Virus record (IMG/VR): IMGVR_UViG_3300036853_000446
Location: 186,001 to 250,000 of that record
Strand: one strand, 5' to 3'
Length of the DNA: 64,000 bases
Part shown: positions 2,471 to 62,350 of the stretch, one piece after another
Layout: each line of letters starts with the position of its first letter
How positions within the stretch are numbered: position 1 is the first letter of the stretch
The notes under the pieces: model-generated
Databases searched by the model: none
Seen by the model: only the letters and a program-made list of their open reading frames with translations
Told to the model about the DNA's origin: nothing
Position numbers and translations under genes: made by a program

Positions 2471-2477
2471 TACACCG
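2471..2477 (-). promoter_or_regulatory. CGGTGTA motif 12 nt upstream of dcd ATG
   Basis: One of about 20 copies at 9-12 nt from start codons (see findings). Confidence 0.75.
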
Positions 2478-2497
2478 GAGGCTCACGCTGACGTTTA

Positions 2498-3880
2498 TCA
2501 GTGATTCCTGAACTGCCAATCTTGGACAATGGCACCCTCAGCCGGCAATGGCCTTTCTTTCCAATCGGCGATGAGCCTCTCGAGCGGTTTAATATCCGAG
2601 GCCATCGACTTGATCATGTCGGGAAACTTACGCTTTGCAGTTTCAACGCCCTTATTCCACCCGCGGTCACCAAGCCTGACGAGCGAGCGAACATCGCCGG
2701 GCACCACAAAAAGGATATCGAGAGTTCCAGCATCAATCTGAGCCAGTAACTCTCGAAGCTTCTCCTGTTGCAAGATGAGGACTTTCACGAGGTGCTTGGT
2801 CCCTTCGGGGGATAACTCAAACGGCGGAAAGCCCGCACTAATGCAGTTGCCCTGGATGCTTCCCCACCCCGGTCGGGTGAAGCCATGATTCACTACGGTC
2901 GGGAGACCTCCCGACGCTTTCAGCTTGACGTTACGGAAGCATCCTCCACATGACCCAGTGTTGTTCCTGGTCCGTTGTGCGCCCGGCTGATGCTCCTCCA
3001 TTCCGAGAGCATCGAGTACCTGTTTACTGAAGCTCGTCTCCTTTTTAAGCCAAGTGACGTAACCGAAGCTCCGAATAAACTTGGTAGCTGGCTTGGGTCC
3101 AAGCTTTGCCAAGTTACGGAAATCTCCTTGTTTGATCGACCGCCGCCACACATTATGCTCAGGTAGGACCTCGAATGTCTTGCCCTCAGGCGACGTTATT
3201 CTGAAGCCGGCGGCGCCGACCCACAACTTGAACTCGAATCCCGTCGCTTCGGGTCCCGCACCGGGAGCCGCACGAACGTCGGTGATATCCATGACGTAAA
3301 TTGCATCCGCGCGGGGCGAGACGGGCAGGCTCGCTACTTCATGCTTTCTCGCGTACGCATGCAATTCGGCCACTTCGGCAGCCACTTTTGACACAAAATC
3401 GGTTTCGTACAGAACATGTACGATTCCGATGCACGGTTCTATGTTCCAACCCCCGAGATGGTCGAGAACCTTCTTTAGCTTGCCGATGCTTTCGATCGGG
3501 GTCGTCACACCCTTACGGAGCTTCAGCAGGATGGCCTCCATGTCGTCGGCAGCCTGGATGTACTGCTCGGCGACGCGGGCCCCGATGAGATCGATGGACT
3601 TCTTGTTCATGGGCATCCAATTCGCACATTTCAGGTAGCGCACGGCGAGCCGTGTTGCGAGCGGAGCCCGTCGGATCTTGAAGAGGGCGATCGTCTTGGT
3701 CTTGTGGGGGCTCTTGTTGAGAGGCTGCAGCTCGACCAACGGGTTACCTCTACCATCGTCATGGAAGGCAACTATTTTTGCGGGCACATTGAGGAATTTG
3801 CCCATCATCACCAAATCCCCGACGTTGAAAAACGCGGCGGCGATGCCCCGGCCATTCTTTTGCTGCCTTGCAGTCCGCAT
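2498..3880 (-). CDS. Leader-bearing protein with two RVA-x-x-Y motifs and C-terminal Cys/His (Zn-binding-like) domain
   Basis: ATRLAVRYLKCA and GARVAEQYIQAA; GSCGGC...NHGFTRPGWG..GNC. Confidence 0.75.
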   Translation of the reverse strand: MRTARQQKNGRGIAAAFFNVGDLVMMGKFLNVPAKIVAFHDDGRGNPLVELQPLNKSPHKTKTIALFKIRRAPLATRLAVRYLKCANWMPMNKKSIDLIGARVAEQYIQAADDMEAILLKLRKGVTTPIESIGKLKKVLDHLGGWNIEPCIGIVHVLYETDFVSKVAAEVAELHAYARKHEVASLPVSPRADAIYVMDITDVRAAPGAGPEATGFEFKLWVGAAGFRITSPEGKTFEVLPEHNVWRRSIKQGDFRNLAKLGPKPATKFIRSFGYVTWLKKETSFSKQVLDALGMEEHQPGAQRTRNNTGSCGGCFRNVKLKASGGLPTVVNHGFTRPGWGSIQGNCISAGFPPFELSPEGTKHLVKVLILQQEKLRELLAQIDAGTLDILFVVPGDVRSLVRLGDRGWNKGVETAKRKFPDMIKSMASDIKPLERLIADWKERPLPAEGAIVQDWQFRNH

Positions 3881-3948
3881 TGCATTCGGGCCGGGCCAAA
3901 AGTAAATCCGCGAGAATGAGGCACTCGCGACCCCCAACGGTCGTCACC

Positions 3949-4290
3949 ATGCGAATGATCCAGAATCCCGACGTCTGGCGCGAAGCGAACATCTCGGCGC
4001 TCGACGGTGTCGATCCTGATGTCTACGACCGAATCCGGTCGACCCCCGGGGCCCACCCCGATGACCTCCTCGATCAACGAGGCGTTCACGTCAAAGCCGT
4101 CTTCGAAACGAAGCGCTACAGTTTTGTGCACTTCGGAGTCCTCATCAAATTCAGGGGCGCTCCGTTGCATTGGCGTACGCCGGGCTACGAAACGGTCGCC
4201 GACGAGGTCGTAGTCGTCTCGACCACGGATAAAGAGACCGTCTGGTTTGGCAGCGTCGAGCAGTACCTCGAGATGTGGTGCGCCGATTGA
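3949..4290 (+). CDS. Hypothetical protein
   Basis: Clean ORF divergent from 2498..3880. Confidence 0.6.
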   Translation: MRMIQNPDVWREANISALDGVDPDVYDRIRSTPGAHPDDLLDQRGVHVKAVFETKRYSFVHFGVLIKFRGAPLHWRTPGYETVADEVVVVSTTDKETVWFGSVEQYLEMWCAD

Positions 4291-4307
4291 CGGTGTAAGA
4301 GCGGACG

Positions 4308-4601
4308 GTGATGGGGTCCATCGTCGTCGTTCACCAACTCGAAGGTGGCTACCGCAGACGGTGGGTCTTCGAGTGGCACGGCCGAGACGTCGTCCTCTTG
4401 CGCTACCACCTCGAGCGTCGCGAGGGCAAAGGCCACCGACTCGTCGAATTCTTCGACGGCCAGGATGCCGGCGACTACGGCAACTGGAAATGGCTCGAGG
4501 AGTCCGAAGTGCCCTGGGACGAGGAGCTTCAGGGTGAGGTCGGACTGGCCATCATCAGCAGGCTACGGATCAGAAGGCCGAGCGAGAGCCGCGACGGCTA
4601 G
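4308..4601 (+). CDS. Hypothetical protein
   Basis: CGGTGTA at 4291-4297, 10 nt before the GTG. Confidence 0.65.
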   Translation: MMGSIVVVHQLEGGYRRRWVFEWHGRDVVLLRYHLERREGKGHRLVEFFDGQDAGDYGNWKWLEESEVPWDEELQGEVGLAIISRLRIRRPSESRDG

Positions 4602-4626
4602 AGTTCTTATCAAGGTCACCCATCGT

Positions 4627-5608: not shown

Positions 5609-5615
5609 TGCACTC

Positions 5616-7384: not shown

Positions 7385-7685
7385 ATTAAAGAGTAACACT
7401 AATTATCGTGGAGAGCAACGTCCGAAGCCAAACGGGCACGAACAGGCCGCCCGGGCCCGAGAGTCCGGTATGCAAGTGCTTGAAATCGTTATATAGAAAG
7501 CGGCAGAAAGGCATAGTCCGCTTCCGACGGGAGTTTCCGACATCTTGGGCCAAAGAGGCCCGTTGGCCTGATTGGGGCCATCGGGGGCCAACCCGAGCGC
7601 GGACGGTTTGGAAGCGACTGACGAACTCGTTGAAGGTCCGCGTTACTCAACTGTCCAATGGATCGACCCGGTGTATTCCCCGGGC

Positions 7686-9712: not shown

Positions 9713-9759
9713 CCCTGTCCGTACACCTACCACCCCGAAGCCGGTGTAGTCGGATGGCG

Positions 9760-16333: not shown

Positions 16334-16663
16334 CGGTCGCAGAGCCGCAGAACCCCGTCTTTTCGCAAGCGGAGTGCGCGGTATCGAAGTGCAGAGGAAA
16401 GCGGCCAACCACCAGGGTTGTGCCGTTCCTCATTCTCCAGCGACGATGCTGGATCGTCCGCTGCGCTCGAGGCGCAGCAACGCATGGACCCGAAAGTTGA
16501 CTTCGAGTTGTGGGGGAAGAGACGCATTCACTAGGCTCCTGTTCAGGATATCACTAGTGACCGGTCTCCTTTTTCGTCTGTGAGTTCAGCAGCATGACAG
16601 CGCCGGTGAGCATGACGCCGCCCCGAACGATGTCAAGTCGAGTCGCCGGTGTAGAGCCTTGGC

Positions 16664-20856: not shown

Positions 20857-21040
20857 GAGGAACCGTCAGTCGATCGTCGATGCAGCGCCCGAGATCTCCT
20901 TCGGAATCCAACGGACCGCAAATCCAAACAAACAGACCAACACCGCGTCGGCACACGAGAACAAATGAGGGACGTCTTTTCGGAGTTTAGTGTCGAGGCC
21001 CACGCGAGCGCCGCCTAGAGTCGGTGTACTTGCCAATCGC

Positions 21041-22129: not shown

Positions 22130-23661
22130 TCAGTCGGTCCCTTTGATCGAGCACACGGGGTAGAGACGGTTCGCGACGCGCGCGATCCCGCACTGCTCGA
22201 GCACGGATAAAACCTCGTCGAGGTCCTTGTAAACGTGGGCGCACTCGTCGAGTGGGGTCTTCTTGTAATTGCCAACGATACCCTCGACCGTGACGCCCGC
22301 GAAGGTTCTTTTGACCGTCGCCATTTCGTTGTCGATGCGGGCCTGCTTGTGCTCAAATTTGTTCTTAGCCTTGCCCCGCGCCATGAGTCGGCCCGAGCCA
22401 TGATTCACGGAGCAGCCCGCGCCGTACGCCCCGGCGAGCGGGAACAGGATCGCGGCGCCCGTGTACATCGAGCCCGGGATGAGGCAGGGGTGGCCCGTGG
22501 TTTCCCATCGGGACCCCGCGAGGTCGGGATGCCCGGCGGGGAAGGCACGTGTCGCCCCTTTCCGATGGACGAAGCCCTTCTTCGTCGTGCCGTCGGGCAG
22601 CACCAGGGTTTCCTGCTGCACGAGGTTGTGACTGATCTCGTAGTAGACCTCGCCCTGGACGTCGAAGACTTCCTCGAGCGCCTCTTGAATCCCTTGCACG
22701 ATGATGTGCCGGTTGGCGATCGCGTAGTTGGCGGCCGAGTTGTGGTACGCCCAGTATTCCTTGCCGAGGGGCTCGTCGGCGCGAAGCCACGAGTCCTCGC
22801 GGCGCTTCATCGGGAGCCCACGGAGGCGGGCACCTTCGATGAAGAAATGATCGGCGATCTGGTGACCGTAACCGCGCGACCCGCAATGCACCATGACCCA
22901 GACCTCTCCCGTGTCACGGTCGCACTGAAGCTCGACGAAATGGTTACCCCCGCCGACGGACCGAGCTGAGGCAGGGCTCGTTTGCGTGCAGTCTCGACCT
23001 TGTCGAGGTCTAGCCCGTCTTGAATGGGTATGTACTGCCGCTCGCAAACGTCCGCCTTGACGCCCAGCGGCTTGGCGCCGTAGCGCAGGATCTCGTCGAG
23101 CTGCGTGTCGTTGAAAGTCTGCATCATCTCTACGCGGTGCGAGCCGACGCCGGTTGCGATGCGCTTCTCGACCTCGCTGATCCAGCGCCCGCGGCGCTCT
23201 TTGCTCTGGACCTTCTTTGCCGAAAGTCCGGGCACCTTTAGGGACAAGATCCCGCAGTTCACGTCGTACCCTGAGCCCGCCTGAATGAGCGTGTCGTCGG
23301 TGACGATCACGCTGCCCACCGGGACGCCAAAGCCAACATGAGTGTCAGGCATCAGGTACGCGCCAGTAACTCCTTCATAGGAAGCTCCGTTTGCGATCTG
23401 CTGCCAGAGCCCTTCGTCCGACGCCGCATAGAGCGCGTCCGACAAGAATGCGTGGACCTCGGTCTTCATCGAGGCCACCTTGGGCAGGACGTAGTGATTC
23501 TCGCCGGTCTTCACCGCGGTGTATTTGAAGGACATGAGCGCGCGAGGTGTATACTCCAAAGATTCGTGGACTACCACTGTCGGCGCCCGCTCCTCCTGAG
23601 TTTGGCGCCCCACGAATCGCTCGACCGCGTGTTTCGTAATGATCGGTTGGGAATCATGCAT
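22130..23661 (-). pseudogene. rtcB: RtcB RNA ligase split by a 1-nt frameshift near 22960
   Basis: MPDTHVGFGVPVG, GYDVNCG, GGGNHF, HCGSRG, HRKGATRA, NHGSGR, DECAHVYKD spread over two frames. Confidence 0.9.
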
Positions 23662-23741
23662 CGGAGATTCGCTTACACCGGTAAATCTCCTCGAGCGTCG
23701 CGTCCGGATCAAAACCCGTGTGTGGCCCGTATTCGGCATTG

Positions 23742-24623: not shown

Positions 24624-24663
24624 TTCCGGATCAAATCCCAACTCTGACCCGTACTACTTTCAA

Positions 24664-27600
24664 ATGGCGAGACCAGAATCGATCGCGGTGGGAGGATTTT
24701 TTCCGACCCCCTCACATCTCATCCCCCTGATCGCTCGACACCTTTCGGTGGGCGATGGGGGCCGCATCTACTACGCCGACCCGTGCGCGGGCGACGGCGC
24801 TGCCATCTACGGCTTACATGAGGCGATGGGTAGTTCCGCGGAGGTCTTCTCGTGCGAGATGGAGGCCGAGCGCCATACGGGTCTCCTGGCTCGCGCCAAC
24901 CTCGACGGTTACAATGCGGCGCAGCGGACGTTGCACGGCGACGCCTTCCGGATCGAGATGTCCGCGGCCATCGGCTGCCTGCTCCTGAATCCCCCCTACG
25001 ACCTCGACTCGGTGCACGGTCGGCTCGAGCAGCGCTTTCTGGAGCGCTTCACGACCGCGCTTTGTGACGGCGGCGTGGTCGTCTTCATCGTTCCCCACTA
25101 TGCGCTCGCGGCATCGGCCAAGACTCTCGCGACCACGTTCGACAACGTCGAATGCTTCCGCTTCCCGAAAGAGGATTTCGCGGCCTTCAAGCAGGTCGTC
25201 GTGTTCGCGTCGAAAACCAAACCGCGACTGTCGCCTGACGCGCTCATCTTGGCGCGAGTCAACGGCTGGGCCAAGACTGTCGCCCGGTGCCCGATCCTGG
25301 GCTCGAAAGAAGACACGCACGAGCTTCACGGCACACACAGCACGCTGACCTGGCAGCTGCGCGAATTTGACCTGAAGGGCCTCATCAGCAAGGCTCGCCC
25401 GTGGCGCGAGTCCCGGTCCAAAGGGGTGGCCGGTGTCCTCACGGTGGTCCCCCACATCCTGCCCGAGATCCCGGTCGAAGACCTGCTGTTCCGTACCTAT
25501 CGGGTTGCAACGGCACCCCGCCCGGCGCACATCGCCGCCGGTATCGCGAGCGGCCTCTTCAACGGACGCGAAGTCTCGAGCGCGACGCCGGGCATGCCGA
25601 ACCTGCTCGTCAAGGGCGTGTTCACTCGCGAGTACGTCACGATCCAGGAGAACGTCAACAGCAAGGGCGAAATCACGGGCGTCACGCAAGTACAGCAACC
25701 CAAGCTCGAAACGACCGTGCTCGACCTTTCGACGAAACGCTACTCGCTGCTCAAACCCGCGGGTTCGGCGACGACATCCGGGATCGACGGGATGGGTATC
25801 GAGGGCCTGCTCGAGCACTACGGGCCGAGCCTCATGAACGTGATGGCGGAGCAGTGCCCGGTCACCTACGACCCGAAGCGCGACGCGACCGGGCTCAGGC
25901 TGGCTCCTGTCGGCCGCCCCCTGTTCCGGGCTCACGAGCACGCAGCCAAGGCCCTGCTGATGTTGCTCGGGGGTCAGGACCTCACCCCGAGCGAACGCAA
26001 AGGCAAGGCCGCCATTCTTCTCGGCGAGATTGGATCGGGGAAGACGGCCACGGTGCTCGCCCTCGGTCAGACGATCGCCAAATGCATCCTGGTGCTCTGC
26101 CCGCCCCACCTACTCGACTCGTGGAAGAACGAGACGAGGGTCGTGCTGCCCGGTGCGGACGTGCGGATCCTGAGTGACCTGAACGACGTCGACGCCCTGG
26201 CCCGTGACCTGGAGCTGCCGAGCGATCGGACCGTCATCGCGGTCCTCTCTCGTGAGGACGGCAAGCTCGGCCACGGCATGGCGGCCGTCGAATACCTGGG
26301 CTGTTGTCCGAAATGCGGCGCGCCCCTGCCCGAAGGAGACCTCGCCAAGAAGCGCGCTCATTGCGACGCCAAGCCCCTGACCTTGGCAGACGACCTGGCA
26401 CGGGCGGCCTTCACGCTCGCTCTCCACGTGGCCCCTCAGGCCCCAGAGGACGGCAACGTCCGGGCCCTTCTCGCCGGGCGTCACCTCGGCCGGTATCTCG
26501 TGAGCCTCGAGGGCCAAAAGAAACGCGCCAAGTGGTCGGGGTTCGATCCCCATTGGGTCCTCACGACGATCGCCACCGTCGTCCAGCGCCTGACGAGCCG
26601 CTTCGATAAGGGCCACGCCGAGTTGCTCGGCGCGCTACTGATGGCCGACTACGACCCGGAGCAGATCGCCACTCTCGCCCGCAAATTCTCCGGCAGCACG
26701 AGCTACGAGCAGCAGGGCCTCGCGCGGGCCCTCACGTGTCTTCTCCCGTTCGGTGGCGAGCTACAAAACGAAGTCCAAAAAGAAACCTACGCGAGCAACG
26801 GCGGCTTCTCTCATTACAAATTCGCGTCGGACGCCGAAACTTTGCGGGAGAAGGGTTTGAGTACGACGATTGGAACGATCGCGCTCGGGGGCGGCCAACT
26901 CCGCCTCAACGACGCCGCGCACGGGTCGGCCAAACTCGCCCTTGGCATTCTGACCCAGCTCGCGGTTCTCGGAAGCTTTCCGCGGGCTAAAGAAGAGTGC
27001 GGCGAAGCACTGTACCAAGCCACCCCGCGGCCTCGTCGGTACCCACTGGCGAAATACATCGCGCGGCGACACCCGAACCTTTTCGACCTCCTCTTGATCG
27101 ACGAGGCCCATGAAAACCAGAACGCCGATTCGGCCCAAAGTAATAGTGCGCACCGTCTGACGGGGCTTGGAATCCCATTCGTGCTCATGACGGGCTCGCT
27201 CATGAACGGCTATGCCGAGTCACTCTTCACGAACATTTGGGCGGTCTCGCCTGACTTCCGCGACGAGTTTAGGCACGACGAAAAGCAGAGATTCAACGAG
27301 CGCTACGGCTACAGCAAACGGATCCTCACGGACAAGGACCGCGAGACCAAAAAAATTGTCTCGTTCGGCACCCAATCCGACCGAGTCGAGCGCGGCGCGA
27401 AGACCGCGGGCAAAGCTCCGGGCCTCCTACCTCTCTTTCTTTTCCGCCACCTGCTCGCGTACGCCGTCACCCTACATAAGGCCGACCTCGCGCTCGATCT
27501 TCCCAAGTGCGCGCACTTTCGACACGAAATCGAGCCGAACGCGACGCAGACCAAAAACTACAAGAGCCTGTTGCGTGCACTGAAGGCGCGGATCAGCCAG

Positions 27601-28359
27601 GACCGCTACTCGACGGAAGGCCTCGCGGGAAAGCTCTTCGGGGCGCTCGCCGAGCTGCCGAGCTACCTCGACCGAGCGACGGGCGACACCGGCAATCAAG
27701 ACGACGGTTCGTACGGGATCTATTACCCGAAAAACGATGGTGGCAAGCTGGTCGCCAAAGCCGAGCCAATGAGTGCCAAGACGATCCTGCCGAAAGAGCA
27801 GTGGATGCTCGACACGGTGCGGGCCGAAATTGCCGAGGGTCGCAACGTGATGGTGTTCTGCTGGCACGTGAACCTACTGCCGCGGCTCGCGCGTCTCTTG
27901 AAAGAGGCGTTGGGAATCGAGTTCCCGGTGCTGCACGCGGACAAGGTTCCGCCCCACAAGCGCGAGGCCTGGATCAACAAGAACGTTCGCGACGTTGGCG
28001 CGCGTGGCATGATCGCCAATCCCGTCGGGATTCAGACGGGTTTGAACAACCTCGTCTATTTCGCTACCGAGATCTGGATGGAGGACCCTGCGTCCAACCC
28101 GACGATCTTCCGTCAGGCCACGGGTCGCGTCGATCGCGTGGGTCAAAAGCTCGAGACCCGCATTCACACGCCGGTCTACGCCGGAACCCTTCAGGTTCAG
28201 CTGCATGACCTGCTGCTCCGAAAGGTGGCCGTCTCGACGGCGACCGACGGGCTCGACAACGAGAGCATGCTCCTGGCGGCCGGCGCCGCGGAGGACGCGA
28301 TGCTGACCGGGCTCTCCATCGGTCGCCAGCTGTGGGACATGATGATGGACGTGAACTGA
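24664..28359 (+). CDS. DNA methyltransferase-SF2 helicase fusion (DUF6094/SNF2-like)
   Basis: DPCAGDG and NPPY; GEIGSGKT, DEAH, MTGS, QATGRVDRVGQ. Confidence 0.9.
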   Translation: MARPESIAVGGFFPTPSHLIPLIARHLSVGDGGRIYYADPCAGDGAAIYGLHEAMGSSAEVFSCEMEAERHTGLLARANLDGYNAAQRTLHGDAFRIEMSAAIGCLLLNPPYDLDSVHGRLEQRFLERFTTALCDGGVVVFIVPHYALAASAKTLATTFDNVECFRFPKEDFAAFKQVVVFASKTKPRLSPDALILARVNGWAKTVARCPILGSKEDTHELHGTHSTLTWQLREFDLKGLISKARPWRESRSKGVAGVLTVVPHILPEIPVEDLLFRTYRVATAPRPAHIAAGIASGLFNGREVSSATPGMPNLLVKGVFTREYVTIQENVNSKGEITGVTQVQQPKLETTVLDLSTKRYSLLKPAGSATTSGIDGMGIEGLLEHYGPSLMNVMAEQCPVTYDPKRDATGLRLAPVGRPLFRAHEHAAKALLMLLGGQDLTPSERKGKAAILLGEIGSGKTATVLALGQTIAKCILVLCPPHLLDSWKNETRVVLPGADVRILSDLNDVDALARDLELPSDRTVIAVLSREDGKLGHGMAAVEYLGCCPKCGAPLPEGDLAKKRAHCDAKPLTLADDLARAAFTLALHVAPQAPEDGNVRALLAGRHLGRYLVSLEGQKKRAKWSGFDPHWVLTTIATVVQRLTSRFDKGHAELLGALLMADYDPEQIATLARKFSGSTSYEQQGLARALTCLLPFGGELQNEVQKETYASNGGFSHYKFASDAETLREKGLSTTIGTIALGGGQLRLNDAAHGSAKLALGILTQLAVLGSFPRAKEECGEALYQATPRPRRYPLAKYIARRHPNLFDLLLIDEAHENQNADSAQSNSAHRLTGLGIPFVLMTGSLMNGYAESLFTNIWAVSPDFRDEFRHDEKQRFNERYGYSKRILTDKDRETKKIVSFGTQSDRVERGAKTAGKAPGLLPLFLFRHLLAYAVTLHKADLALDLPKCAHFRHEIEPNATQTKNYKSLLRALKARISQDRYSTEGLAGKLFGALAELPSYLDRATGDTGNQDDGSYGIYYPKNDGGKLVAKAEPMSAKTILPKEQWMLDTVRAEIAEGRNVMVFCWHVNLLPRLARLLKEALGIEFPVLHADKVPPHKREAWINKNVRDVGARGMIANPVGIQTGLNNLVYFATEIWMEDPASNPTIFRQATGRVDRVGQKLETRIHTPVYAGTLQVQLHDLLLRKVAVSTATDGLDNESMLLAAGAAEDAMLTGLSIGRQLWDMMMDVN

Positions 28360-28408
28360 CAGAGGGCTAGGTCTCCTCGGTGTAGAGGCTATCGAGGAGA
28401 CCCAGCCC

Positions 28409-31325: not shown

Positions 31326-31595
31326 TCAAGGCAGGCCGACACCGTGCGGCGCGAGACTCGCCTTCAGCCGGTCGTATTTCGCCTGCAAGGCCATCAGATT
31401 CTTTGAGGAGCGGTCATTGTCCGCGTTGCTGCCCAAGTCGTCAACGGACTGTAAGGCAGTGAGCCCGTCACGCAGCGTTTCGACTTGTTTGCGGGTCTCC
31501 TCGAGGGTTTGAGGCTCTCCCAATGCGAGTGCCTCATCCCCTTTCTTAAGGCGCAAAATATCCCGCGCGCTGGGTCCGGTGCGTCGGTGTTCCAT
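31326..31595 (-). CDS. Hypothetical coiled-coil protein
   Basis: CGGTGTA at 31606-31612, 10 nt upstream. Confidence 0.65.
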   Translation of the reverse strand: MEHRRTGPSARDILRLKKGDEALALGEPQTLEETRKQVETLRDGLTALQSVDDLGSNADNDRSSKNLMALQAKYDRLKASLAPHGVGLP

Positions 31596-31827
31596 GGTTG
31601 GCCCCTACACCGGCTGATTCGTGGTACCGTGACTTGGGCCTGTGCGACGCCGTTTGGCCGCATTACTCCGAGGCAAAAAAAATAGAGGTTCTACCACACC
31701 CCTCGCCCATACATAAGTCGTAACACCGTCATGGACCCGCCTAAACAGGAGTAGTACGGGTAACGCACGGGAACTGGTTGACGGTGACCGTCTGAACCGA
31801 AAGCCTTCCCGAGTTAGGGGTCCTGCG

Positions 31828-32273: not shown

Positions 32274-32468
32274 TTATAGCCAGCCGCGGAACCAGGTAAG
32301 CTGAATATCGAAATACCGAATTACCGTATCGAGCGCGACGCCCACGGAGAACAATACGAGGGCCAGAAACCAAAAGAAGCGGTCCGAGTTGACCCAACGC
32401 CAGGCCCGCTCCCAGAACGGAGAACGGAACGTGGACTCGTCAGCATGATCATCGTCTGAGGGCGGCAT
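32274..32468 (-). CDS. Small membrane protein
   Basis: TM helix; CGGTGTA 9 nt upstream. Confidence 0.65.
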   Translation of the reverse strand: MPPSDDDHADESTFRSPFWERAWRWVNSDRFFWFLALVLFSVGVALDTVIRYFDIQLTWFRGWL

Positions 32469-32487
32469 CCCCTGCCGTACACCGCGA

Positions 32488-33627: not shown

Positions 33628-33846
33628 TCAATATCTTCTGGAAGTCCGTTCACCAACCAAGCCACCGGGGGATTCGACCAGCACGTGCCATTCGCCCTCG
33701 AGCCACAGCATGGGCACTCGTTTCGGCACCGACCAACGGTTGACGTGCATGCCACGCCACGAAGACTGTCCCTCGGTCTGAACCCAATGTTCATCGCGAT
33801 GCCACCCTTCACCCAACCCCACGTCAGCGCGCACCCATCTGGCCAT
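33628..33846 (-). CDS. Hypothetical protein
   Basis: CGGTGTA 10 nt upstream. Confidence 0.6.
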   Translation of the reverse strand: MARWVRADVGLGEGWHRDEHWVQTEGQSSWRGMHVNRWSVPKRVPMLWLEGEWHVLVESPGGLVGERTSRRY

Positions 33847-33931
33847 GCTCGGTGGTTACACCGGCGCCGGATCAAAGGGCGGGATCAAAAAGCCTACCCT
33901 AAGGACCGCCGGTGGGGGTTATCATTGCGCC

Positions 33932-35714: not shown

Positions 35715-35849
35715 ATGCCGTGAGCGGGATTGCTCGGTAACCGCGACTCGATCGCACACCGATTGATCGAATAAAGAGCCTCTCTCGAGGCGACCCGAAA
35801 ATTTCCCGGCCCACGTAGCCCCACAACGGGGCGGTGTACTTCCGGGACC

Positions 35850-37163: not shown

Positions 37164-37427
37164 CTCCCAGAACGAACCCGGGCGACTCGTCAGCTCATTA
37201 TCTCGCGTCTCTTTCATCCCGTCTCAGAGGGAGGGTCCATTTGCAGGATCGCGTGCTGCAGCGCCTCGAGATCCTCCGCGGACAATTCGGAAGAGGCTTG
37301 GCCGATCGTGGTCGGCGCGGAGTGGGACGGCCTTAGCGCGCTAGGGCGAGCGGCACGCGCCGAAACCACTTGGAAAGACGCTTCTCCGGATCAAAAACTA
37401 CCGGAGCATCCGTACTGATTAGCAAAC

Positions 37428-39492: not shown

Positions 39493-39574
39493 AGACTGGC
39501 TACCCCGTTGCGATGGAGCCTCACGCCGGTGTAAGCCCTCGGTATGAGTAGAGCCTCGGAAGTCGAGACGAACG

Positions 39575-39703
39575 ATGTGTGACCTCATCCAGGCACTCAA
39601 CGGGCTGACGTGGCCCGCCGCGTTTGCGATTGCCGTCATCGCGATTGCATGTGCGTTCATAGGCTATTCGTATTTTCGGAGCTTCTGGTTTCGGAGCTTC
39701 TGA
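39575..39703 (+). CDS. Small membrane protein (not in ORF track)
   Basis: MCDLIQALNGLTWPAAFAIAVIAIACAFIGYSYFRSFWFRSF. Confidence 0.5.
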   Translation: MCDLIQALNGLTWPAAFAIAVIAIACAFIGYSYFRSFWFRSF

Positions 39704-39741
39704 TGAACGTCAAAAAGAAGCCGCGGTGTACCTCCGTAGCC

Positions 39742-40086: not shown

Positions 40087-40150
40087 CGCCTGAACCGAAA
40101 AATAGGGCGCGCGCCGGTGTAGTTATCCCCCGAAGGAGGCTGGAAAGCAT

Positions 40151-40474
40151 ATGGGAGACTGGGCAGACGCAGTTCTGGAGGGCGAGTTCTGTGAAGGGTG
40201 TGGAACGGAGATGGAAATCGGGGTGGGTTACCCGCAGCGATGCAAGGCCTGTTCGGAAGCTGGAGACACGGATGATTCTCTGCTCGACGACGGCGCCGAA
40301 AAGGCCGAGTTACTCATGAGAGAGATCCGAATGTTCGACGCCTTGGAGCTTGACCGCTTTCTCTCGGAGCTTCGGGCTTGGCTCACCAGGTCCATCATCA
40401 TCCACTCGGAGGAGGGACAGCCGATTGCGATCGAGTCCACGATCGATCCGACACCCTATTACCCGCCGCGCTAA
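40151..40474 (+). CDS. Hypothetical protein
   Basis: MGDWADAVLEGEFCEGCG; AAGGAGG RBS. Confidence 0.7.
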   Translation: MGDWADAVLEGEFCEGCGTEMEIGVGYPQRCKACSEAGDTDDSLLDDGAEKAELLMREIRMFDALELDRFLSELRAWLTRSIIIHSEEGQPIAIESTIDPTPYYPPR

Positions 40475-42221: not shown

Positions 42222-42578
42222 TTACTGCATGAGCCGCCTAGCTTCAGGGCACCGTTGGGAGTCCTCCAGACACCGCCCTTGGTGCTCGGCCAATTGTTGA
42301 TCTCGTCTCCGCCGCTCGAGTTCGAACCGGGTCAAGCTCTCAAAGAACGTCAAGAAACGAGCGTCGTCGGTGGGGAGATCCCATTCGATTTCCTCGAAAC
42401 AAGTCCGAAGAAGCTGAGCAATCACGGATGACAGGCCTTGTGTCTGACCGATGACACGCCTGATGAGCCCCTCGCGCGCGGCGGGATCGGGGCTGCCCCA
42501 CTGCTCTGAAATCGCGCTAAGGGCCATTTCTAGTGCAGCAGCTTCATTGGACACGGAGTCAGAGCGTTGGTTGGTCAC
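42222..42578 (-). CDS. Hypothetical protein
   Basis: AGGTGTA 11 nt upstream. Confidence 0.6.
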   Translation of the reverse strand: MTNQRSDSVSNEAAALEMALSAISEQWGSPDPAAREGLIRRVIGQTQGLSSVIAQLLRTCFEEIEWDLPTDDARFLTFFESLTRFELERRRRDQQLAEHQGRCLEDSQRCPEARRLMQ

Positions 42579-42712
42579 TCAGGGGATGTTACACCTGAGG
42601 CGTCGCAGGGCAGATTGGAAGACGAGTTCTGGCCCCGGTTTGGTCAGGTGACCGACAAGGGTCGTGTTCACATATTCGTAGTTTAAAGAATGCATGCTAG
42701 GATCTAAAAACG

Positions 42713-45018: not shown

Positions 45019-45659
45019 GCCGGGTAGCTACACCACGGGACTCCGCACGGCACCACCCCATGACGCCGACTTTCGGTCAATGCAGCGTCTCGCGGAGCCC
45101 GTAGAGGTCGAGGCAGTCCTCCCGAGACTCCTTCGCGAGGGTCGCATCGTGGAAGCGCACGGCGTAGTATCGGGTCCCGTCGGGCCCGCTGACGGTCAAG
45201 AGCAGGTCCGCGGTGCCCTCCTTCAGCAGCTCGTAGACCCGCTCGGGGGACTCGACCAGCGTCTGCGAGCAGCCCTCGGGGTTGAGGGCCTGGATGATGC
45301 GGAGCTTCAGGTCCGATCGCCGCTGCTCGCGTGCTTCCTTGCGCCAAAAAATGACCCGGGCCCAAATTTCGAAGATTCCCTTCACTGCGCACCTTGGTCG
45401 GCTTGTAAGCGGTTTGACGAGATTGCGAGCGCGGTTTTCTGGAAATGAAGAGGGGGAGGACATTGGCCCTGTCTCCCGTCATCCGGCATGGAGCCCGGTG
45501 CCGCCCGGTCACTGCCCCGTCTGCAAAGCCAAGCCGGGCGAGGCTTGCGACGCGGGGCTGCACTCGTGAGTCTGGCCCTTCGGTTTCGTGCGTCGCGATG
45601 ACCTCGTGATGCTTCAAAGGGGGACGCTGCAAGAAGAGCTGGGTGTAAGACTCCCAGCC

Positions 45660-45837: not shown

Positions 45838-46188
45838 TCACAAGTTCGGAGTGGGCTCGTCCACCCAAACCCGGATCCCCTCCTCCGTGCGCTGAAGCGT
45901 GACCGCAAGGCCCCGGTCGAGAAGGTCCCCGGCGATGCGGAGGGCGTCCTCTAGCGTGCCGTGAAGGGCGGGCGACCCGACGTAAGACGTCTCCGCCAAA
46001 AGGCGCCCACGGCCCCCGTCGGCGACCGTGATGGCCATCCGCGGCGCCGCGTCGCGCTCCCGTCTGATAGAGCGAGCGAACGAGGCGAGCCGATCGCAGC
46101 CCATGAGCGTGGCGCTGATCTCCTCGAGGAGACGGGAGAGTAGGAGTCCGGAGTGAGGGCCGCCGGGGAGCGAGGGTTGTTGGGCCAC
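45838..46188 (-). CDS. Hypothetical protein
   Basis: CGGTGTA 11 nt upstream of the GTG. Confidence 0.55.
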   Translation of the reverse strand: MAQQPSLPGGPHSGLLLSRLLEEISATLMGCDRLASFARSIRRERDAAPRMAITVADGGRGRLLAETSYVGSPALHGTLEDALRIAGDLLDRGLAVTLQRTEEGIRVWVDEPTPNL

Positions 46189-46639
46189 GAAGAGAAGGGT
46201 ACACCGGTGGCCGGCGTCCACGAAGACCGCTCGCCGTCGAAGCTGGCGTCCACAGGGGGCAAAATCGGGCGTGAGACCCTCCGAGGACCGCGCCTAAGCC
46301 ATTGAAATAGGCAGCGATTTGGAAAGTTCGTCGAACGGACGCTTTCGGGCGTCGGCGCGATGGGGGAGAGCCGAAATACCCCATAAATGCCGTATTTTCG
46401 GACCCGCCGCGAGAGCCGTTTTGGACCTGCGTGGAATGAATCGCGAGTCATGGCCTGCTGGCACTCTAAATCACGGTAAGAGCGGACGATTTTGACCACC
46501 GGAGCCCAAATTTGGACCCCAAGGACCACGAAATGGGTCCCCTTTTGGTGGGGTGAGGGGGTGCGAAACGGAAAATGCCCCGGCGAGCGGCAACCACAAA
46601 GGCAAACCCTCAACACCGGATTCTCCATACAATGGACCC

Positions 46640-47668: not shown

Positions 47669-47821
47669 GTGATCGGTCGTGCGGGGGAAGTCCCCACCCT
47701 CCACTCCCTGAGTACGGGTCGGAGGGGCAGCTTTGATCCTATGAAATTCAGATGGATCAAACCTGGGGCTTCAACTCGTACTCGAGGGAGTGGTGGGTGG
47801 GAACCGGTGTAGTGAGGGGGG

Positions 47822-48109
47822 ATGTTGGACGACGATCTGGAGCTTAGCGCCCTGAGGGCACTCAACGCGCGCCTCGAGGCCCTGTACGCGCGCCTCGGGG
47901 AAGGCGGGGACTGCCCGAAGCCCGTGCTCGAGATCGCTATTGACGCCCTCGAGAGGGAGGTCGTGTTGCTGATCCAGGCTCGGTGTGATGCGCGGCTCAG
48001 CTCGGGACGCCGACCCTCTGGGGTGTCTCAAACCGGGGGACTGAACGAGCAAAATTCCGTGTCGTTACCGGATACTGAACTGTCCCGTTGCGCCGGCTCG
48101 GGGCACTGA
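47822..48109 (+). CDS. Hypothetical protein
   Basis: CGGTGTA 10 nt upstream. Confidence 0.55.
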   Translation: MLDDDLELSALRALNARLEALYARLGEGGDCPKPVLEIAIDALEREVVLLIQARCDARLSSGRRPSGVSQTGGLNEQNSVSLPDTELSRCAGSGH

Positions 48110-53507: not shown

Positions 53508-53609
53508 GGTGGGGAAGTCCTTTTCTCGTACAACCGGCGCATCAATGGATTTGGCAACGCGATCCAGAGCTAACCAGGGCACGGATCAAACCGTTGGGCT
53601 CGCCCGTAC

Positions 53610-53969
53610 TTGGCTTTGCCCCCTATGAAAACCCCCCTCATCACGGTTCGCTCTGCCGGCTCCACGCGCCCCGGCTTTGCCCAAATCACGTTACAGGTCT
53701 CGACGGTTAGCGACCCCGCCACCAGCCACGACGAGTGGATCACGGGGCTTCGCGAGCGGCGCGCCCTCACCGCCGCCGTCTATTGCGTGGCCGCCCGTCT
53801 CGAGCAGATCGCTAGCACGGAGGCCCTCGAGTTAGAAGTCAGCGTCGGCCAAATCCGGCTCGGCGTCATCGACGTCGACACCCGCAAGGACGCCCTCGAC
53901 GACGACATCATCACCGAAATCGTCATCGAAGCCTGCGTCGATTGCGGCTTCACGCTCGCCGATCAGTAA
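53610..53969 (+). CDS. Hypothetical protein
   Basis: 119 aa ORF. Confidence 0.55.
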   Translation: MALPPMKTPLITVRSAGSTRPGFAQITLQVSTVSDPATSHDEWITGLRERRALTAAVYCVAARLEQIASTEALELEVSVGQIRLGVIDVDTRKDALDDDIITEIVIEACVDCGFTLADQ

Positions 53970-56346: not shown

Positions 56347-56456
56347 GGGTGAAGGCCTTTCGCCTCACGTCGGCGCATCAACGGATTCTTGGGTGTGGGC
56401 CCCGTGGAATCGCGCAGTCCCGCACTCGCTCCCACGGGCTCGGTGTAGCTCATGAC

Positions 56457-58986: not shown

Positions 58987-59102
58987 GTTTACCTCTGCGT
59001 AGGGCGTCGATAAGAACAAAACCGTAAACGCTCGTCGGATGGTGCGTCAGACGAAGCAACAAGCGGCAACGGCGCACGCCCCTCCGGTGTAGAATCGTAG
59101 CC

Positions 59103-59399: not shown

Positions 59400-59420
59400 G
59401 CTTTTCCATAAAACAACGTC

Positions 59421-59687
59421 TCATCGCGAGCCCTCGCCCGAGTTGCTCCCGAGGGTTTCGCGCAGGAGCCCGATCACTGCTTCGGCCTCCGAGCGCCGGA
59501 TCGTGATGGTCGGTGAGTCGCGTGAGGGCGGGCAAAACTCGCCGTTAGCTGCATTCAGCCAGAACACGCGGAAGGAGACGAACCGCCTGCCTTTGACTTC
59601 TATCAGCTGGATCTTGAGTTGCTCGGGTTTGCCGGAGCGAGATGCACGGGAAAACGAGATCTCACGAATCGTCCGAAAGTCCGCCAT
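59421..59687 (-). CDS. PC4/YdbC-like ssDNA-binding protein
   Basis: LKIQLIEVKGRRFVSFRVFW..ITIR. Confidence 0.65.
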   Translation of the reverse strand: MADFRTIREISFSRASRSGKPEQLKIQLIEVKGRRFVSFRVFWLNAANGEFCPPSRDSPTITIRRSEAEAVIGLLRETLGSNSGEGSR

Positions 59688-59853
59688 AGTAAATCGAGGG
59701 ATAGGTAAATGTTGATAATCATTGATGCTTATTCCCTCGTACGGTCAGGTTTGGCAATGTCCGAACGATGGTCAGTGGACAACTGAGCTTAGATCGGATC
59801 ACGGCCGCTCGTACACGGCCCTCGTACTTTTATAAACCAGGCGCGGCATCGAT

Positions 59854-60639: not shown

Positions 60640-60949
60640 CTCCGACCGGAGCCCATGAATGAATTACCGTCGGGCAAGGCAGCAGCACCCCTGGTCGCCC
60701 CGTGGTGAGGCGTGGCCCTTCCCACGTCCCGAGCGACCTTCCACTAACCCGGGGCCCTCTCTAGCCCGTGCAGAGCCCGTCCTGTTGCAGACCGGCGGTC
60801 GTCCCTCGGATCAAACGTGCCGCGCCGCCCGTACTCTCGGTTGACTTTGAGCTTTCCTCAAGTCAGTTTAGGAGCGACAAGATGGCTCGCGTCATCCACT
60901 CCTGCTCCCCCAAAACCAATTCCCCTCGAACCGCGGTACACTCACCCAC

Positions 60950-61201
60950 ATGGCGCAATCCTCCAAAGCCTCGCTCCCGGTCGACCTTCTCGAGAAGGCT
61001 CTCGGTCTCTCTCCCGATGCGCGCTTGGCGCTGGCCACCGAGCTATTGGACAGCGTCGAAGGGTCCGACCCCGCTTGGGAGCAGGCTTGGAGTCGCGAAC
61101 TCGATCGCCGTGCCGCCGAGGCCGACGCTCATCCCGAGCAGGGAATTCCGTGGTCCGTGGCGCGCGCCCAACTCGAAGCCCTCGTCAGCCCGAAACCGTG
61201 A
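60950..61201 (+). CDS. Addiction-module antitoxin (TIGR02574-like); partner toxin truncated
   Basis: ALGLSPDARLALATELLDS..AWSRELDRR..IPWSV. Confidence 0.85.
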   Translation: MAQSSKASLPVDLLEKALGLSPDARLALATELLDSVEGSDPAWEQAWSRELDRRAAEADAHPEQGIPWSVARAQLEALVSPKP

Positions 61202-61271
61202 AGCCCATCGTTTGATGGCTTTGAGTAGGTCTCGGATAACGGGAACCTTCTTGTGCGTGGCCAATTTGAAG

Positions 61272-61697
61272 ATGGAGTACTCATACGACCGACGCATGCA
61301 CGCTGCAAACTCCGGCGACGACGCTGAAGACGACGCCGACAAGCTCACCGACTTGCAGGGGCTGATCGCGGACGCATTGACAGCGGCTCGAGCGACGGCG
61401 GATGAGCTGGACAAGAGCACAGATTCCGATGCTCTGGACGCACCGCTCAAGCTCGCGAAAGAGCTATGCAGTGACTTCAGCTCGGCGGAAACGTGCGAAA
61501 CAGTCGCCGACTATCTGGCCAATATTCGGGCTGCGAAAACCAATGTCGGGAAGCTCGAGGCTGCGCTGAAGTTGGCCAAGAAGAGCGCCAAACGAGAAGA
61601 CGACGCCGAAGCGCTCGAAGCGCTCGAGGATGCCAGCGACGAGCTGAAAACCGTAAAGCGCGAGCTGCATGACATCGAGGGCGAGATCGATGGCTAG
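61272..61697 (+). CDS. Leader-bearing acidic helical protein
   Basis: MEYSYDRRMHAA leader. Confidence 0.7.
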   Translation: MEYSYDRRMHAANSGDDAEDDADKLTDLQGLIADALTAARATADELDKSTDSDALDAPLKLAKELCSDFSSAETCETVADYLANIRAAKTNVGKLEAALKLAKKSAKREDDAEALEALEDASDELKTVKRELHDIEGEIDG

Positions 61698-61712
61698 CCT
61701 CCTGAAAGAACC

Positions 61713-61964
61713 ATGAAGATTCAGATCCGCGATCGGACGGGAGGGCGGCTAGTCGAGCCGATTGGCGCGCTCGGCGACACGGTTCTCCAGTGCACGCTCG
61801 AGGACGCCTCGAGGGTCGCGGGCAGCCTCTACGCCAGGGGCCTCGACGTCACGCTCGAACACGCGAGAGAAAGCGACAACGTGGACGCCGTGTTGTGGGT
61901 TGGCGATCCCCGGTACCCCAAGGCCGTAGCTAGAAGGTGGGTTAACTCATGGCCAAACCACTAG
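61713..61964 (+). CDS. Hypothetical protein
   Basis: 83 aa ORF. Confidence 0.55.
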   Translation: MKIQIRDRTGGRLVEPIGALGDTVLQCTLEDASRVAGSLYARGLDVTLEHARESDNVDAVLWVGDPRYPKAVARRWVNSWPNH

Positions 61965-62290
61965 ACCCAAAGGTCGCGATCCCAATACTGCAAGGCGTCA
62001 ATGCGACCCTCGAGGCGCTCTGCAACGAAAAGCACGGCGAGCTGACCGACGACATCCTAAAGCCTCTCGAGCAGGCGATCAGGGCCATTCGGGAGGCCAC
62101 CGCCGCCATCCTGCTTGCCACTCCCGACGAGTCACTCGCTGGGCTCATCTCGACGCTCGAAGCCCAGACGGTGCCCGGGGGAACCGTTCCCCCGTTCGCT
62201 CCCGCCACGCTCGGCCCTAACCAGGTTTTCATCTCTCGCTACCCGACCCCCGAAGACCTCATCGAAAAGCCGGAGAAGCGTCGACCCTGA
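61949..62290 (+). CDS. Hypothetical protein
   Basis: 113 aa ORF. Confidence 0.6.
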   Translation: MAKPLDPKVAIPILQGVNATLEALCNEKHGELTDDILKPLEQAIRAIREATAAILLATPDESLAGLISTLEAQTVPGGTVPPFAPATLGPNQVFISRYPTPEDLIEKPEKRRP

Positions 62291-62350
62291 ATCTCCTTGA
62301 CCCCGATCCGACAAAGCTTCGCCTCGGCTCGGGCGGTGTACCCGGTCGGG

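What the first reader, a model, noticed from the sequence alone, without database searches (positions are those of the whole stretch)
2471..62340. GGTGTA motif 9-12 nt before about 20 start codons: a leaderless-mRNA regulon
Seen: CGGTGTA with spacer to start at 2471(-,12), 4291(10), 7669(10), 9742(11), 16647(10), 21022(12), 23674(-,12), 31606(-,10), 32478(-,9), 33857(-,10), 35832(11), 39527(10, mini-ORF), 39724(11), 46200(-,11), 47805(10), 56441(9), 59085(11), 62334(10). Variants: AGGTGTA 9722(-,9) and 42590(-,11), TGGTGTA 45029(-,10), GGGTGTA 45641(12). These genes mostly lack a Shine-Dalgarno. If TA is the -12/-11 of a -10 element, +1 falls on or next to the start codon. The other -10 positions and a -35 are not conserved, which suggests an element-specific sigma factor, RNAP or activator. 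Nearly every small accessory gene has its own promoter.
Basis: partly seen in the sequence, partly recalled or inferred. Interest (0 to 1): 0.75.

Follow-up and report, generated by a model that had tools for sequence, protein, structure and literature searches.

The report
Start-codon-adjacent promoter motif in huge phage
A 407-kb soil phage and its relatives carry a strictly conserved 7-base motif (CGGTGTA) about ten bases in front of roughly a fifth of their genes, which most likely is a phage-clade promoter that starts the mRNA at the start codon; this is a new variant of leaderless expression, a known strategy.

Summary
In the whole 407-kb phage record, 77 GGTGTA copies lie 8-14 nt (mode 9-10) before an ATG or GTG that opens an ORF of at least 50 codons.

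No -35 element and no other -10 position is conserved. The motif is the top start-anchored hexamer in three related huge phages and is retained before orthologous genes while the spacers diverge. More distant relatives use GGCGTAA in the same place.

Motif genes lack a Shine-Dalgarno sequence and never start with TTG. Intergenic copies far from a start codon are often followed by SD plus ATG. Divergent gene pairs leave only 47-90 nt between start codons.

A second, clearly bipartite promoter class (GGATCAAA-N12/13-CCCGTAYT, about 6 nt before ATG) has the same geometry. In one relative this class precedes a phage FliA/WhiG-like sigma gene.

No phage RNA polymerase, full-length sigma or gp55 homologue was found in this genome. 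No RNA data were listed, so transcription starts remain inferred. About one gene in three has such a promoter, not nearly every gene.

Verdict: probably a phage-clade promoter giving leaderless mRNAs; the factor that reads it is unknown.

The parts
2471..2477 (-). class-1 motif CGGTGTA; 12 nt to ATG at 2458; ORF 1760-2458 (232 aa)
   Evidence: The orthologue in relative G001 also has the motif, and the N-termini align.
4291..4297 (+). class-1 motif; 10 nt to GTG 4308 (in-frame ATG at 4311); ORF to 4601
7669..7675 (+). class-1 motif; 10 nt to ATG 7686; ORF to 8006
9722..9748 (.). back-to-back divergent pair: AGGTGTA (-, 9722-9728, ATG 9712) and CGGTGTA (+, 9742-9748, ATG 9760); only 47 nt between the two start codons
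   Evidence: The minus-strand gene's orthologue in G001 keeps the motif, with N-termini MKVLV.. and VKVLV...
16647..16653 (+). class-1 motif; 10 nt to ATG 16664; ORF to 17371 (235 aa)
21022..21028 (+). class-1 motif; 12 nt to ATG 21041; ORF to 21523
   Evidence: low coding score in my crude model
23674..23680 (-). class-1 motif; 12 nt to ATG 23661; ORF 22807-23661 (RtcB-like N-terminal part)
23706..23733 (+). class-2 promoter (GGATCAAA ... CCCGTATT); 8 nt to ATG 23742 (293 aa). It is divergent from the class-1 site at 23674, with 80 nt between start codons.
24628..24655 (+). class-2 promoter; 8 nt to ATG 24664 of the 1231-aa methyltransferase-helicase gene
28378..28384 (+). CGGTGTA inside a hairpin after the helicase gene, followed by AGGAG and ATG 28409 at 24 nt: a possible copy with a leader, or a chance match
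31606..31612 (-). class-1 motif; 10 nt to ATG 31595; ORF 31326-31595
32478..32484 (-). class-1 motif; 9 nt to ATG 32468; ORF 32274-32468
33857..33863 (-). class-1 motif; 10 nt to ATG 33846; ORF 33628-33846
35832..35838 (+). class-1 motif; 11 nt to ATG 35850; ORF to 36197
37388..37416 (+). class-2 promoter; 11 nt to ATG 37428 (121 aa)
39527..39533 (+). class-1 motif; 10 nt to an ATG opening only a 12-codon mini-ORF
39724..39730 (+). class-1 motif; 11 nt to ATG 39742; ORF to 40086
40115..40153 (+). class-1 motif with a leader: CGGTGTA, then 29 nt containing GGAGG, then ATG 40151 (107 aa)
42590..42596 (-). class-1 variant AGGTGTA; 11 nt to GTG 42578; ORF 42222-42578
45029..45035 (-). class-1 variant TGGTGTA; 10 nt to ATG 45018 (54 aa)
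45641..45647 (+). class-1 variant GGGTGTA; 12 nt to ATG 45660 (55 aa)
46200..46206 (-). class-1 motif; 11 nt to GTG 46188; ORF 45838-46188
47711..47739 (-). class-2 promoter; 6 nt to GTG 47704 (84 aa); divergent from the next part
47754..47824 (+). tandem promoters before one gene: class 2 (47754-47782), then class-1 CGGTGTA (47805-47811), then 10 nt (GTGAGGGGGG) to ATG 47822
53583..53610 (+). class-2 promoter; the next good ATG is at 53625 (14 nt), so a short leader is likely
56441..56447 (+). class-1 motif; 9 nt to GTG 56457; ORF to 57254 (265 aa)
59085..59091 (+). class-1 motif; 11 nt to ATG 59103; ORF to 59399
60808..60835 (+). class-2 promoter; the start codon of the downstream gene is uncertain (TTG 60841 or a later start)
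62334..62340 (+). class-1 motif; 10 nt to ATG 62351; ORF to 62665

Best explanation
YGGTGTA ('class 1') is the core, and apparently the only conserved, element of a promoter class specific to one clade of roughly 400-kb soil phages. It lies where a -10 region would lie if the RNA began at the A or G of the start codon. The host RNA polymerase, directed by a factor not yet identified, would start transcription about 10 nt downstream. That gives mRNAs with no leader, or a leader of 0-4 nt, which ribosomes would translate without a Shine-Dalgarno sequence. A minority of copies sit 24-42 nt from the start codon and then use an SD. The phage also has a second, bipartite promoter class (GGATCA-N16/17-CGTAYT, about 6 nt before ATG) with the same leaderless geometry. 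Shown here: positional enrichment, conservation, lack of SD, start-codon bias, genomic context, and absence of a phage RNA polymerase. Inferred: the transcription start, leaderless translation, and the identity of the factor.
For: 1. Position. 77 sites have ATG or GTG at 8-14 nt (mode 9-10), against about 19 expected from other distances. GTGTA is the most enriched 5-mer upstream of independent gene calls.
2. Conservation. GGTGTA is the top start-anchored hexamer in G000, G001 (127 sites) and G002 (63 sites). The pattern count against a reversed control is 47/5, 31/7, 41/0 and 12/3 in four relatives.
3. Orthologues. They keep the motif: 8/19 against 11/145, p=2.5e-4; and 7/18 against 4/152, p=1e-5. 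Protein alignments begin at the motif-defined start while the spacers differ completely.
4. Drift. More distant relatives carry GGCGTAA(G) at the same place, so signal and reader appear to have drifted together.
5. No SD. SD cores were found in 0/57, 6/90 and 2/38 motif genes, against an 8-10% background and 13-26% at other first start codons.
6. Start codons. 61 ATG, 16 GTG and 0 TTG. This matches the ATG-or-GTG rule for leaderless initiation in mycobacteria (PMC4633059).
7. Copies away from a start codon. 20 of 41 are intergenic, and at least six of those are followed at 24-42 nt by an SD core and ATG, with a few more by looser G-rich stretches.
8. Divergent pairs have 47, 68, 80 and 89 nt between start codons, and canonical sigma70 promoters are not enriched (4 against 3.5 expected).
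9. Class 2 has two boxes at promoter spacing and ends about 6 nt before ATG, so promoters that abut start codons do exist in this phage.
10. The motif is about 28 times denser here (105 per Mb) than in 39 bacterial genomes of one candidate host phylum (3.7 per Mb; control 2.0).
Against: - No RNA 5' ends: no RNA run was listed, and only soil DNA runs hold the sequence.
- The motif is not a sigma70-type hexamer: T at -7 is absent (13/77), and in this genome the would-be melting region is G+C-rich.
- No reader was found. Missing are a multisubunit or T7-like RNA polymerase, a full sigma and a gp55-like protein.
- The only sigma-related core gene has region-4-type HTH domains alone. It is also present in relatives that lack GGTGTA.
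- 22 of the 77 ORFs score poorly in my crude coding model, and roughly 10-19 sites may be chance matches.
- The contig is only 86% complete by CheckV.
Confidence: 0.65

Rival explanations
1. The motif acts in the RNA. It would be a phage-specific translation-initiation signal that substitutes for the SD or recruits a modified ribosome, or the binding site of a translational regulator or processing nuclease (in the manner of T4 RegA or RegB) lying 9-13 nt before the start codon. Transcription would begin further upstream.
For: The strict coupling to start codons, the 5-nt spacing tolerance typical of ribosome-binding signals, and the presence of the motif before genes packed tightly behind an upstream stop codon (for example 4291) would all fit. 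GGTG is complementary to part of the usual anti-SD tail (established knowledge). No sigma or RNA polymerase was found to read it as DNA.
Against: - GGTG ends 11-15 nt before the start codon, about 8-10 nt too far for SD pairing.
- Intergenic copies away from a start codon are followed by an ordinary SD plus ATG, which a ribosome signal would not need.
- Divergent pairs with 47-90 nt between start codons leave no room for upstream promoters, and sigma70-like promoters are not enriched.
- TTG starts are absent, although leadered initiation accepts TTG (PMC4633059).
- The class-2 promoters show the same start-adjacent geometry.
Confidence: 0.12
2. The motif is a promoter element, but it is read by a host alternative sigma factor with no phage-encoded specificity factor. 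A group-3 sigma whose -10 element resembles GGGTAT would be one candidate. The phage clade would simply have adopted a host regulon signal.
For: No phage sigma with a region 2 is found in G000, G003 or G004. GTGTAT in relative G001 resembles the GGGTAT -10 element of SigB/SigF-type promoters (recalled from memory, not tested). The same motif is kept across phages of 48-60% G+C.
Against: Those host promoters need a -35 box, and none is present here. The pattern is near background in 39 genomes of the one phylum that could be sampled. The motif changes to GGCGTAA in the sister sub-clade. The host is unknown, so this rival cannot be excluded.
Confidence: 0.2
3. The motif is an operator. A phage DNA-binding regulator, for instance the conserved protein with two sigma-region-4-type HTH domains, would bind it to repress or activate promoters whose real core elements are too degenerate to see.
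For: A conserved two-HTH, zinc-ribbon protein exists in every relative. The motif is short, sharp and strand-specific.
Against: A single asymmetric 7-mer without a dyad or repeat is unusual for an operator. The fixed distance to the start codon, rather than to any other detectable promoter element, then has no explanation. That protein also occurs in relatives lacking GGTGTA. A complex prediction could not be run.
Confidence: 0.08

Closest known systems
-10 motif adjacent to ORFs that drives leaderless genes in Deinococcus-Thermus and Actinobacteria (TANNNT; PMC12340547, PMC4633059, PMC3898074; 'leaderless' genome class of GeneMarkS-2, PMC6028130)
   Same: A promoter -10-type element lies a few bases before the start codon. 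There is no SD. Start codons are ATG or GTG only. A second set of genes uses SD.
   Different: The element here is YGGTGTA, not TANNNT, and T at -7 is not conserved. It is specific to a phage clade and near background in the bacterial genomes sampled. It marks about 15-20% of phage genes.
Phage T4 late promoters (TATAAATA at -10, no -35 box, read by gp55 with gp33 and the gp45 clamp; annotation seen, the rest from established knowledge)
   Same: One short, nearly invariant element without a -35 box, used many times across a large phage genome alongside another, bipartite promoter class.
   Different: No gp55 homologue (phrog_234 and phrog_12791 absent). The sequence is G+C-rich. T4 late mRNAs have leaders and SDs, whereas here the element abuts the start codon.
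Leaderless middle and late transcripts of Thermus phages phiYS40 and P23-45
   Same: Phage promoters that lack a -35 box and sit immediately before start codons, giving leaderless mRNAs.
   Different: Those elements are, as I recall, sigma-A-type extended -10 sequences in an A+T-rich phage. The motif here is unrelated, and its host is unknown.
FliA/WhiG (sigma-28) and ECF-type bipartite promoters, often autoregulatory (PMC7776599)
   Same: Class 2 has two near-consensus boxes 16-17 nt apart. In relative G001 it precedes a phage FliA/WhiG-like sigma gene.
   Different: The -35 box differs between phages (GGATCA against CTTAAG). No cognate sigma was found on this contig. The promoter is placed for a leaderless start.
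Short promoters of jumbo-phage non-virion RNA polymerases (phiKZ, AR9; PMC4666361, PMC5312081, PMC7598289)
   Same: A very large phage with short, idiosyncratic promoter motifs near the transcription start.
   Different: No multisubunit phage RNA polymerase here: Pfam beta and beta' domains are absent, and there is no DFDGD motif in six frames.

Membership tests
sigma70-type -10 element of leaderless genes (TANNNT) | T at -12, A at -11 and T at -7 conserved | tested here: not met
   TA is invariant, but the position that would be -7 is T in only 13 of 77 sites. It is weakly A/T in relatives G001 and G002.
sigma70-type -10 element of leaderless genes (TANNNT) | element ends 5-8 nt before the start codon; no SD in between | tested here: met
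   The spacer after TA is 9-10 nt at the mode, so a hexamer would end 5-6 nt before ATG. An SD core was found in 0/57 motif genes.
sigma70-type -10 element of leaderless genes (TANNNT) | transcription start coincides with the start codon | not testable with these tools
   No RNA run was listed; the only holders are soil DNA runs kept as contigs.
T4-type late promoter system | single conserved -10 element, no -35 box | tested here: met
T4-type late promoter system | gp55-family sigma encoded by the phage | tested here: not met
   phrog_234 and phrog_12791 give no match at E<=1 in G000-G003 and G005. A very divergent analogue cannot be excluded.
Bipartite alternative-sigma promoter (FliA/WhiG or ECF type), applied to class 2 | -35 and -10 boxes separated by 16-18 nt, near consensus in every copy | tested here: met
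   GGATCA-N16/17-CGTAYT at about 31 sites in G000; CTTAAG-N17-CGTAYT at about 38 sites in G001.
Bipartite alternative-sigma promoter (FliA/WhiG or ECF type), applied to class 2 | cognate sigma factor present, often behind its own promoter | tested here: inconclusive
   G001 has a FliA/WhiG-like sigma (E 2e-37) behind a class-2 promoter. No orthologue is on the G000 contig, which is 86% complete.
Shine-Dalgarno ribosome-binding site | complementarity to the 16S 3' tail at 5-10 nt from the start codon | tested here: not met
   Only GGTG could pair, and it ends 11-15 nt before the start codon. The host's 16S sequence is unknown.
Jumbo-phage RNA polymerase promoters | phage-encoded multisubunit or single-subunit RNA polymerase | tested here: not met
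   PF00623, PF00562 and PF00940 are absent, and there is no DFDGD motif. The PF00940 search had no positive control.

The most novel reading that the evidence does not exclude
The motif is read by a factor with no detectable similarity to sigma70-family or gp55 proteins, which co-evolves with it (GGTGTA in one sub-clade, GGCGTAA in the other). Alternatively, it works in the RNA as an SD-independent, phage-specific ribosome-recruitment signal. Either way a whole family of huge soil phages would carry its own private gene-expression code, coupling transcription start and translation start for a fifth of its genes.
Probability: 0.15. Interest if true: 0.85.

Novelty: new variant of a known kind. 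Interest (0 to 1): 0.6.

Why it matters
Huge phages known only from metagenomes are largely unannotated, and nothing is known about how they are transcribed. A 7-base signal that marks true start codons and transcription units in a whole clade improves gene calling at once, including small ORFs and the choice between ATG and GTG. It also divides the genome into promoter classes that probably reflect timing of expression.

The signal gives a host clue: the host should translate leaderless ATG and GTG mRNAs well, as actinobacteria and Deinococcus-Thermus do. It also defines a concrete biochemical target, the unknown reader of GGTGTA. The drift of the motif between sub-clades, and the swap of the -35 box in class 2, offer a natural data set on how promoter and factor evolve together.

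Tried and rejected
- RNA evidence: no RNA run was listed for a 6-kb motif-dense stretch. The 'any' search found only two soil DNA runs kept as contigs.
- Phage RNA polymerase: none found. Pfam beta and beta' gave nothing, a T7-like search had no positive control, and a six-frame scan for DFDGD was empty.
- Sigma hunt:
  - PF04542 gave only a spurious weak hit inside a gene on the other strand.
- TIGR02937 found only a protein with two region-4-type HTH domains.
  - The gp55 families are absent.
  - Sigma genes of G001 and G002 have no orthologue in G000 by BLAST, phmmer or HMM.
  - Ten class-2-driven ORFs and ten conserved core ORFs gave no sigma-like domain.
  - The neighbouring 342-aa protein is uninformative.
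- Complex prediction of the HTH protein with motif DNA was not folded by the tool: no evidence either way.
- Host identification:
  - Atlas taxa for the MotA/ExbB-like protein are mixed.
  - TerL relatives occur in MAGs named Lysinibacter, Actinomycetota and Parcubacteria. In the Lysinibacter MAG the motif hits lie on large phage-like contigs, so this looks like a binning artefact and is only a weak lead.
- Upstream element for class 1: the only enriched words are the reverse complement of the motif itself, from divergent partner promoters.
- tRNA genes (30 in one array) are not preceded by the motif, so they give no translation-independent test.
- Rfam found nothing in the window.
- A literature search for GGTGTA as a promoter found nothing relevant.

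Full report
**What the sequence is.** The window is bases 186,001-250,000 of a single 407,634-bp IMG/VR virus record. The record is linear, 86% complete by CheckV and 60.5% G+C. It is a tailed phage with a large terminase, a portal and a head protease. It carries about 30 tRNA genes in one array. Only soil metagenome DNA runs hold the sequence. Bases 0-180 kb and 355-407 kb carry large genes, almost all on the minus strand. Bases 180-355 kb, which include the window, carry small genes on both strands.

- GGTGTA occurs 32 times in the window against 8.8 expected, and CGGTGTA 24 times against 3.1.
- In the whole genome, 61 of 101 CGGTGTA copies have a start codon opening an ORF of at least 50 codons at a spacer of 9-13 nt. 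Other distances give 1-3 per position.
- Counting all GGTGTA, there are 77 such sites, with modal spacers of 9 and 10 nt.
- The signal appears without prior knowledge. Upstream of 457 genes called by a simple coding model, GTGTA is the most enriched 5-mer (34 against 3.7). An EM motif search returns C-G-G-T-G-T-A with no information in the flanks.
- One-base variants of the hexamer are essentially not enriched at that distance.
- No -35 box exists at fixed or variable distance. The only enriched upstream words are the motif's own reverse complement, from divergent partner sites.

Following the next enriched words (CCGTA, GTACT) led to about 31 copies of GGATCAAA-N12/13-CCCGTAYT. These lie 4-12 nt (mode 6) before a start codon, which is ATG in 23 of 27 cases. 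Seven copies are in the window, one of them before the 1231-aa methyltransferase-helicase gene.
- Written as GGATCA-N16/17-CGTAYT, this is an ordinary two-box promoter architecture of the alternative-sigma kind. Such promoters are near-consensus and have 16-18-nt spacers (PMC7776599).
- With six bases between the -10 box and ATG there is no room for a leader.
- So this phage has promoters that abut start codons, which makes the same reading of GGTGTA much more credible.

**Relatives.** Large-terminase searches found related huge-phage contigs at 48-59% identity.
- The pattern CGGTGTA-N9-13-ATG, counted against its reversed control, gives 47/5, 31/7, 41/0 and 12/3 in four relatives. It gives 31/2 and 13/1 in two further fragments.
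- After fetching two relatives, a start-anchored hexamer scan again puts GGTGTA first: 127 sites in G001 (52% G+C) and 63 in G002 (48% G+C). Only YGGTGTA is conserved, with weak A/T richness just downstream.
- Orthologues of motif genes keep the motif far more often than other genes do: 8/19 against 11/145, p=2.5e-4; and 7/18 against 4/152, p=1e-5.
- In those pairs the protein alignment starts at, or within a few residues of, the motif-defined start codon. One genome may use ATG and the other GTG, while the spacer sequences are unrelated. The adjacent start codons are therefore real, and the motif itself is under selection.
- The two most distant relatives (terminase 48-49%) and GenBank LR745208.1 lack the enrichment. 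The first two instead have GGCGTAA(G) 7-9 nt before ATG or GTG.
- Class 2 also varies. G001 has CTTAAG-N17-CGTAYT, the same -10 box with a different -35 box.

**DNA signal or RNA signal?** There are no RNA data, so the argument is indirect.
1. Motif genes have no SD core: 0/57, 6/90 and 2/38 in three genomes. The background is 8-10%, and other first start codons show 13-26%.
2. Start codons are 61 ATG, 16 GTG and no TTG. In mycobacteria, ATG or GTG at the 5' end is necessary and sufficient for leaderless initiation, TTG fails there, and TTG works only with a leader (PMC4633059).
3. Of the 41 CGGTGTA copies not next to a start codon, 20 are intergenic, although only about 19% of the genome is intergenic. 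At least six of those are followed at 24-42 nt by an SD core and an ATG, with a few more by looser G-rich stretches. One example is window 40115, followed by GGAGG and ATG 40151. A promoter explains both arrangements; a ribosome signal does not.
4. Divergent gene pairs have 47, 68, 80 and 89 nt between their start codons, and these gaps hold two back-to-back motifs and nothing else recognisable. Canonical sigma70 promoters are not enriched (4 against 3.5 expected).
5. GGTG ends 11-15 nt before the start codon, too far for SD pairing.

Against the promoter reading: T at -7 is not conserved, the would-be melting region is G+C-rich in this genome, and no reader has been found.

**Who reads it?**
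- There is no phage RNA polymerase, so the host enzyme must be used.
- This contig has no sigma factor with a region 2 and no gp55-like protein.
- The only sigma-related conserved gene encodes 238 aa with two region-4-type HTH domains and a zinc ribbon (genome 107864-108577). It lies next to a gene fusing a NusG/RfaH-like domain to a 5'-3' exonuclease.
- That protein belongs to a widespread viral HTH family and is also present where GGTGTA is absent. It is a candidate only.
- In relative G001 a FliA/WhiG-like sigma (E 2e-37) lies directly behind a class-2 promoter. This is the autoregulatory layout typical of alternative sigmas, so class 2 is probably a phage-sigma regulon there. The orthologue may lie in the missing 14% of this genome.
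- The pattern CGGTGTA-N9-11-ATG occurs 105 times per Mb in the phage. In 39 genomes of the phylum of one MAG that carries related phage contigs, it occurs 3.7 times per Mb, against 2.0 for the control.
- That speaks against a common host signal, but the host is unknown and the MAG link looks like a binning artefact.

**Assessment.**
- The leaderless-promoter interpretation is the best-supported one (about 0.65), but it rests on sequence logic only.
- 'Element-specific sigma or RNA polymerase' is half right at most: there is no polymerase, and a specificity factor is plausible but unidentified.
- 'Nearly every small gene has its own promoter' is too strong. About 30 promoter-like sites serve about 92 genes in the window.
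- Relative to what is known, this is a new variant. Comparators are -10 elements adjacent to ORFs in Deinococcus-Thermus and actinobacteria (PMC12340547, PMC4633059), T4's late promoters without a -35 box, and the leaderless transcripts of Thermus phages (recalled).
- What differs is an unrelated, G+C-rich, nearly invariant 7-mer private to a family of uncultivated huge phages, with evidence that the signal drifts between sub-clades.

Noticed in passing
window 23706-23733, 24628-24655, 37388-37416, 47711-47739(-), 47754-47782, 53583-53610, 60808-60835; about 31 sites genome-wide, densest at genome 253-325 kb: A second, bipartite promoter-like motif, GGATCAAA-N12/13-CCCGTAYT, about 6 nt before ATG. 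Relative G001 has the same -10 box with a different -35 box (CTTAAG).
   Followed up: yes
window 47754-47824: A class-2 promoter and a class-1 motif lie in tandem before one gene. The spacer before ATG 47822 is GTGAGGGGGG, so the gene could be made with a leader and SD from class 2, and leaderless from class 1.
   Followed up: partly
window 39527-39582: A class-1 motif followed by an ATG that opens only a 12-codon mini-ORF, about 200 nt before the next motif-bearing gene. This could be a small leaderless peptide or a non-coding transcript.
   Followed up: no
genome 140,248-164,650 (outside the window; loci L009-L011): An array of 30 tRNA genes on the minus strand covering most amino acids. None is preceded by the class-1 motif.
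   Followed up: partly
genome 107,864-110,434 (locus L038): A conserved 238-aa protein with two sigma-region-4-type HTH domains and a zinc ribbon. It lies next to a gene fusing a NusG/RfaH-like domain to a 5'-3' flap exonuclease. Both are core genes of the phage family.
   Followed up: partly
genome 323,197-324,042 (locus L017:3197-4042): A tyrosine recombinase (Phage_integrase, E 1e-27) behind a class-2 promoter, in a phage otherwise resembling a lytic huge phage.
   Followed up: no
relative G002, C1:326330-326935: The orthologue of the HTH protein is read through two TAG codons, so this 48% G+C relative may recode TAG.
   Followed up: no
relatives G005 and G052 (loci L090-L109): More distant relatives (63% G+C) lack GGTGTA enrichment. 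They have GGCGTAA(G) 7-9 nt before ATG or GTG at about 20 and 12 sites respectively.
   Followed up: partly
Genome contigs record JBBAQX010000004.1 and other contigs of the same MAG (G006): A MAG named Lysinibacter sp. contains several large contigs that carry the phage terminase and many motif sites (18 on its contig 1). These are probably huge-phage contigs binned into a bacterial MAG.
   Followed up: partly
window 24664-28359: A 1231-aa fusion of a DUF6094-type methyltransferase with an SNF2/helicase C-terminal region. Its nearest relative in the phage collection is in LR745208.1 (40% identity).
   Followed up: partly
whole genome: TCGA-containing hexamers (CTCGAG, TCTCGA, CGTCGA) are the most over-represented words, 4-4.6 times the mononucleotide expectation.
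   Followed up: no
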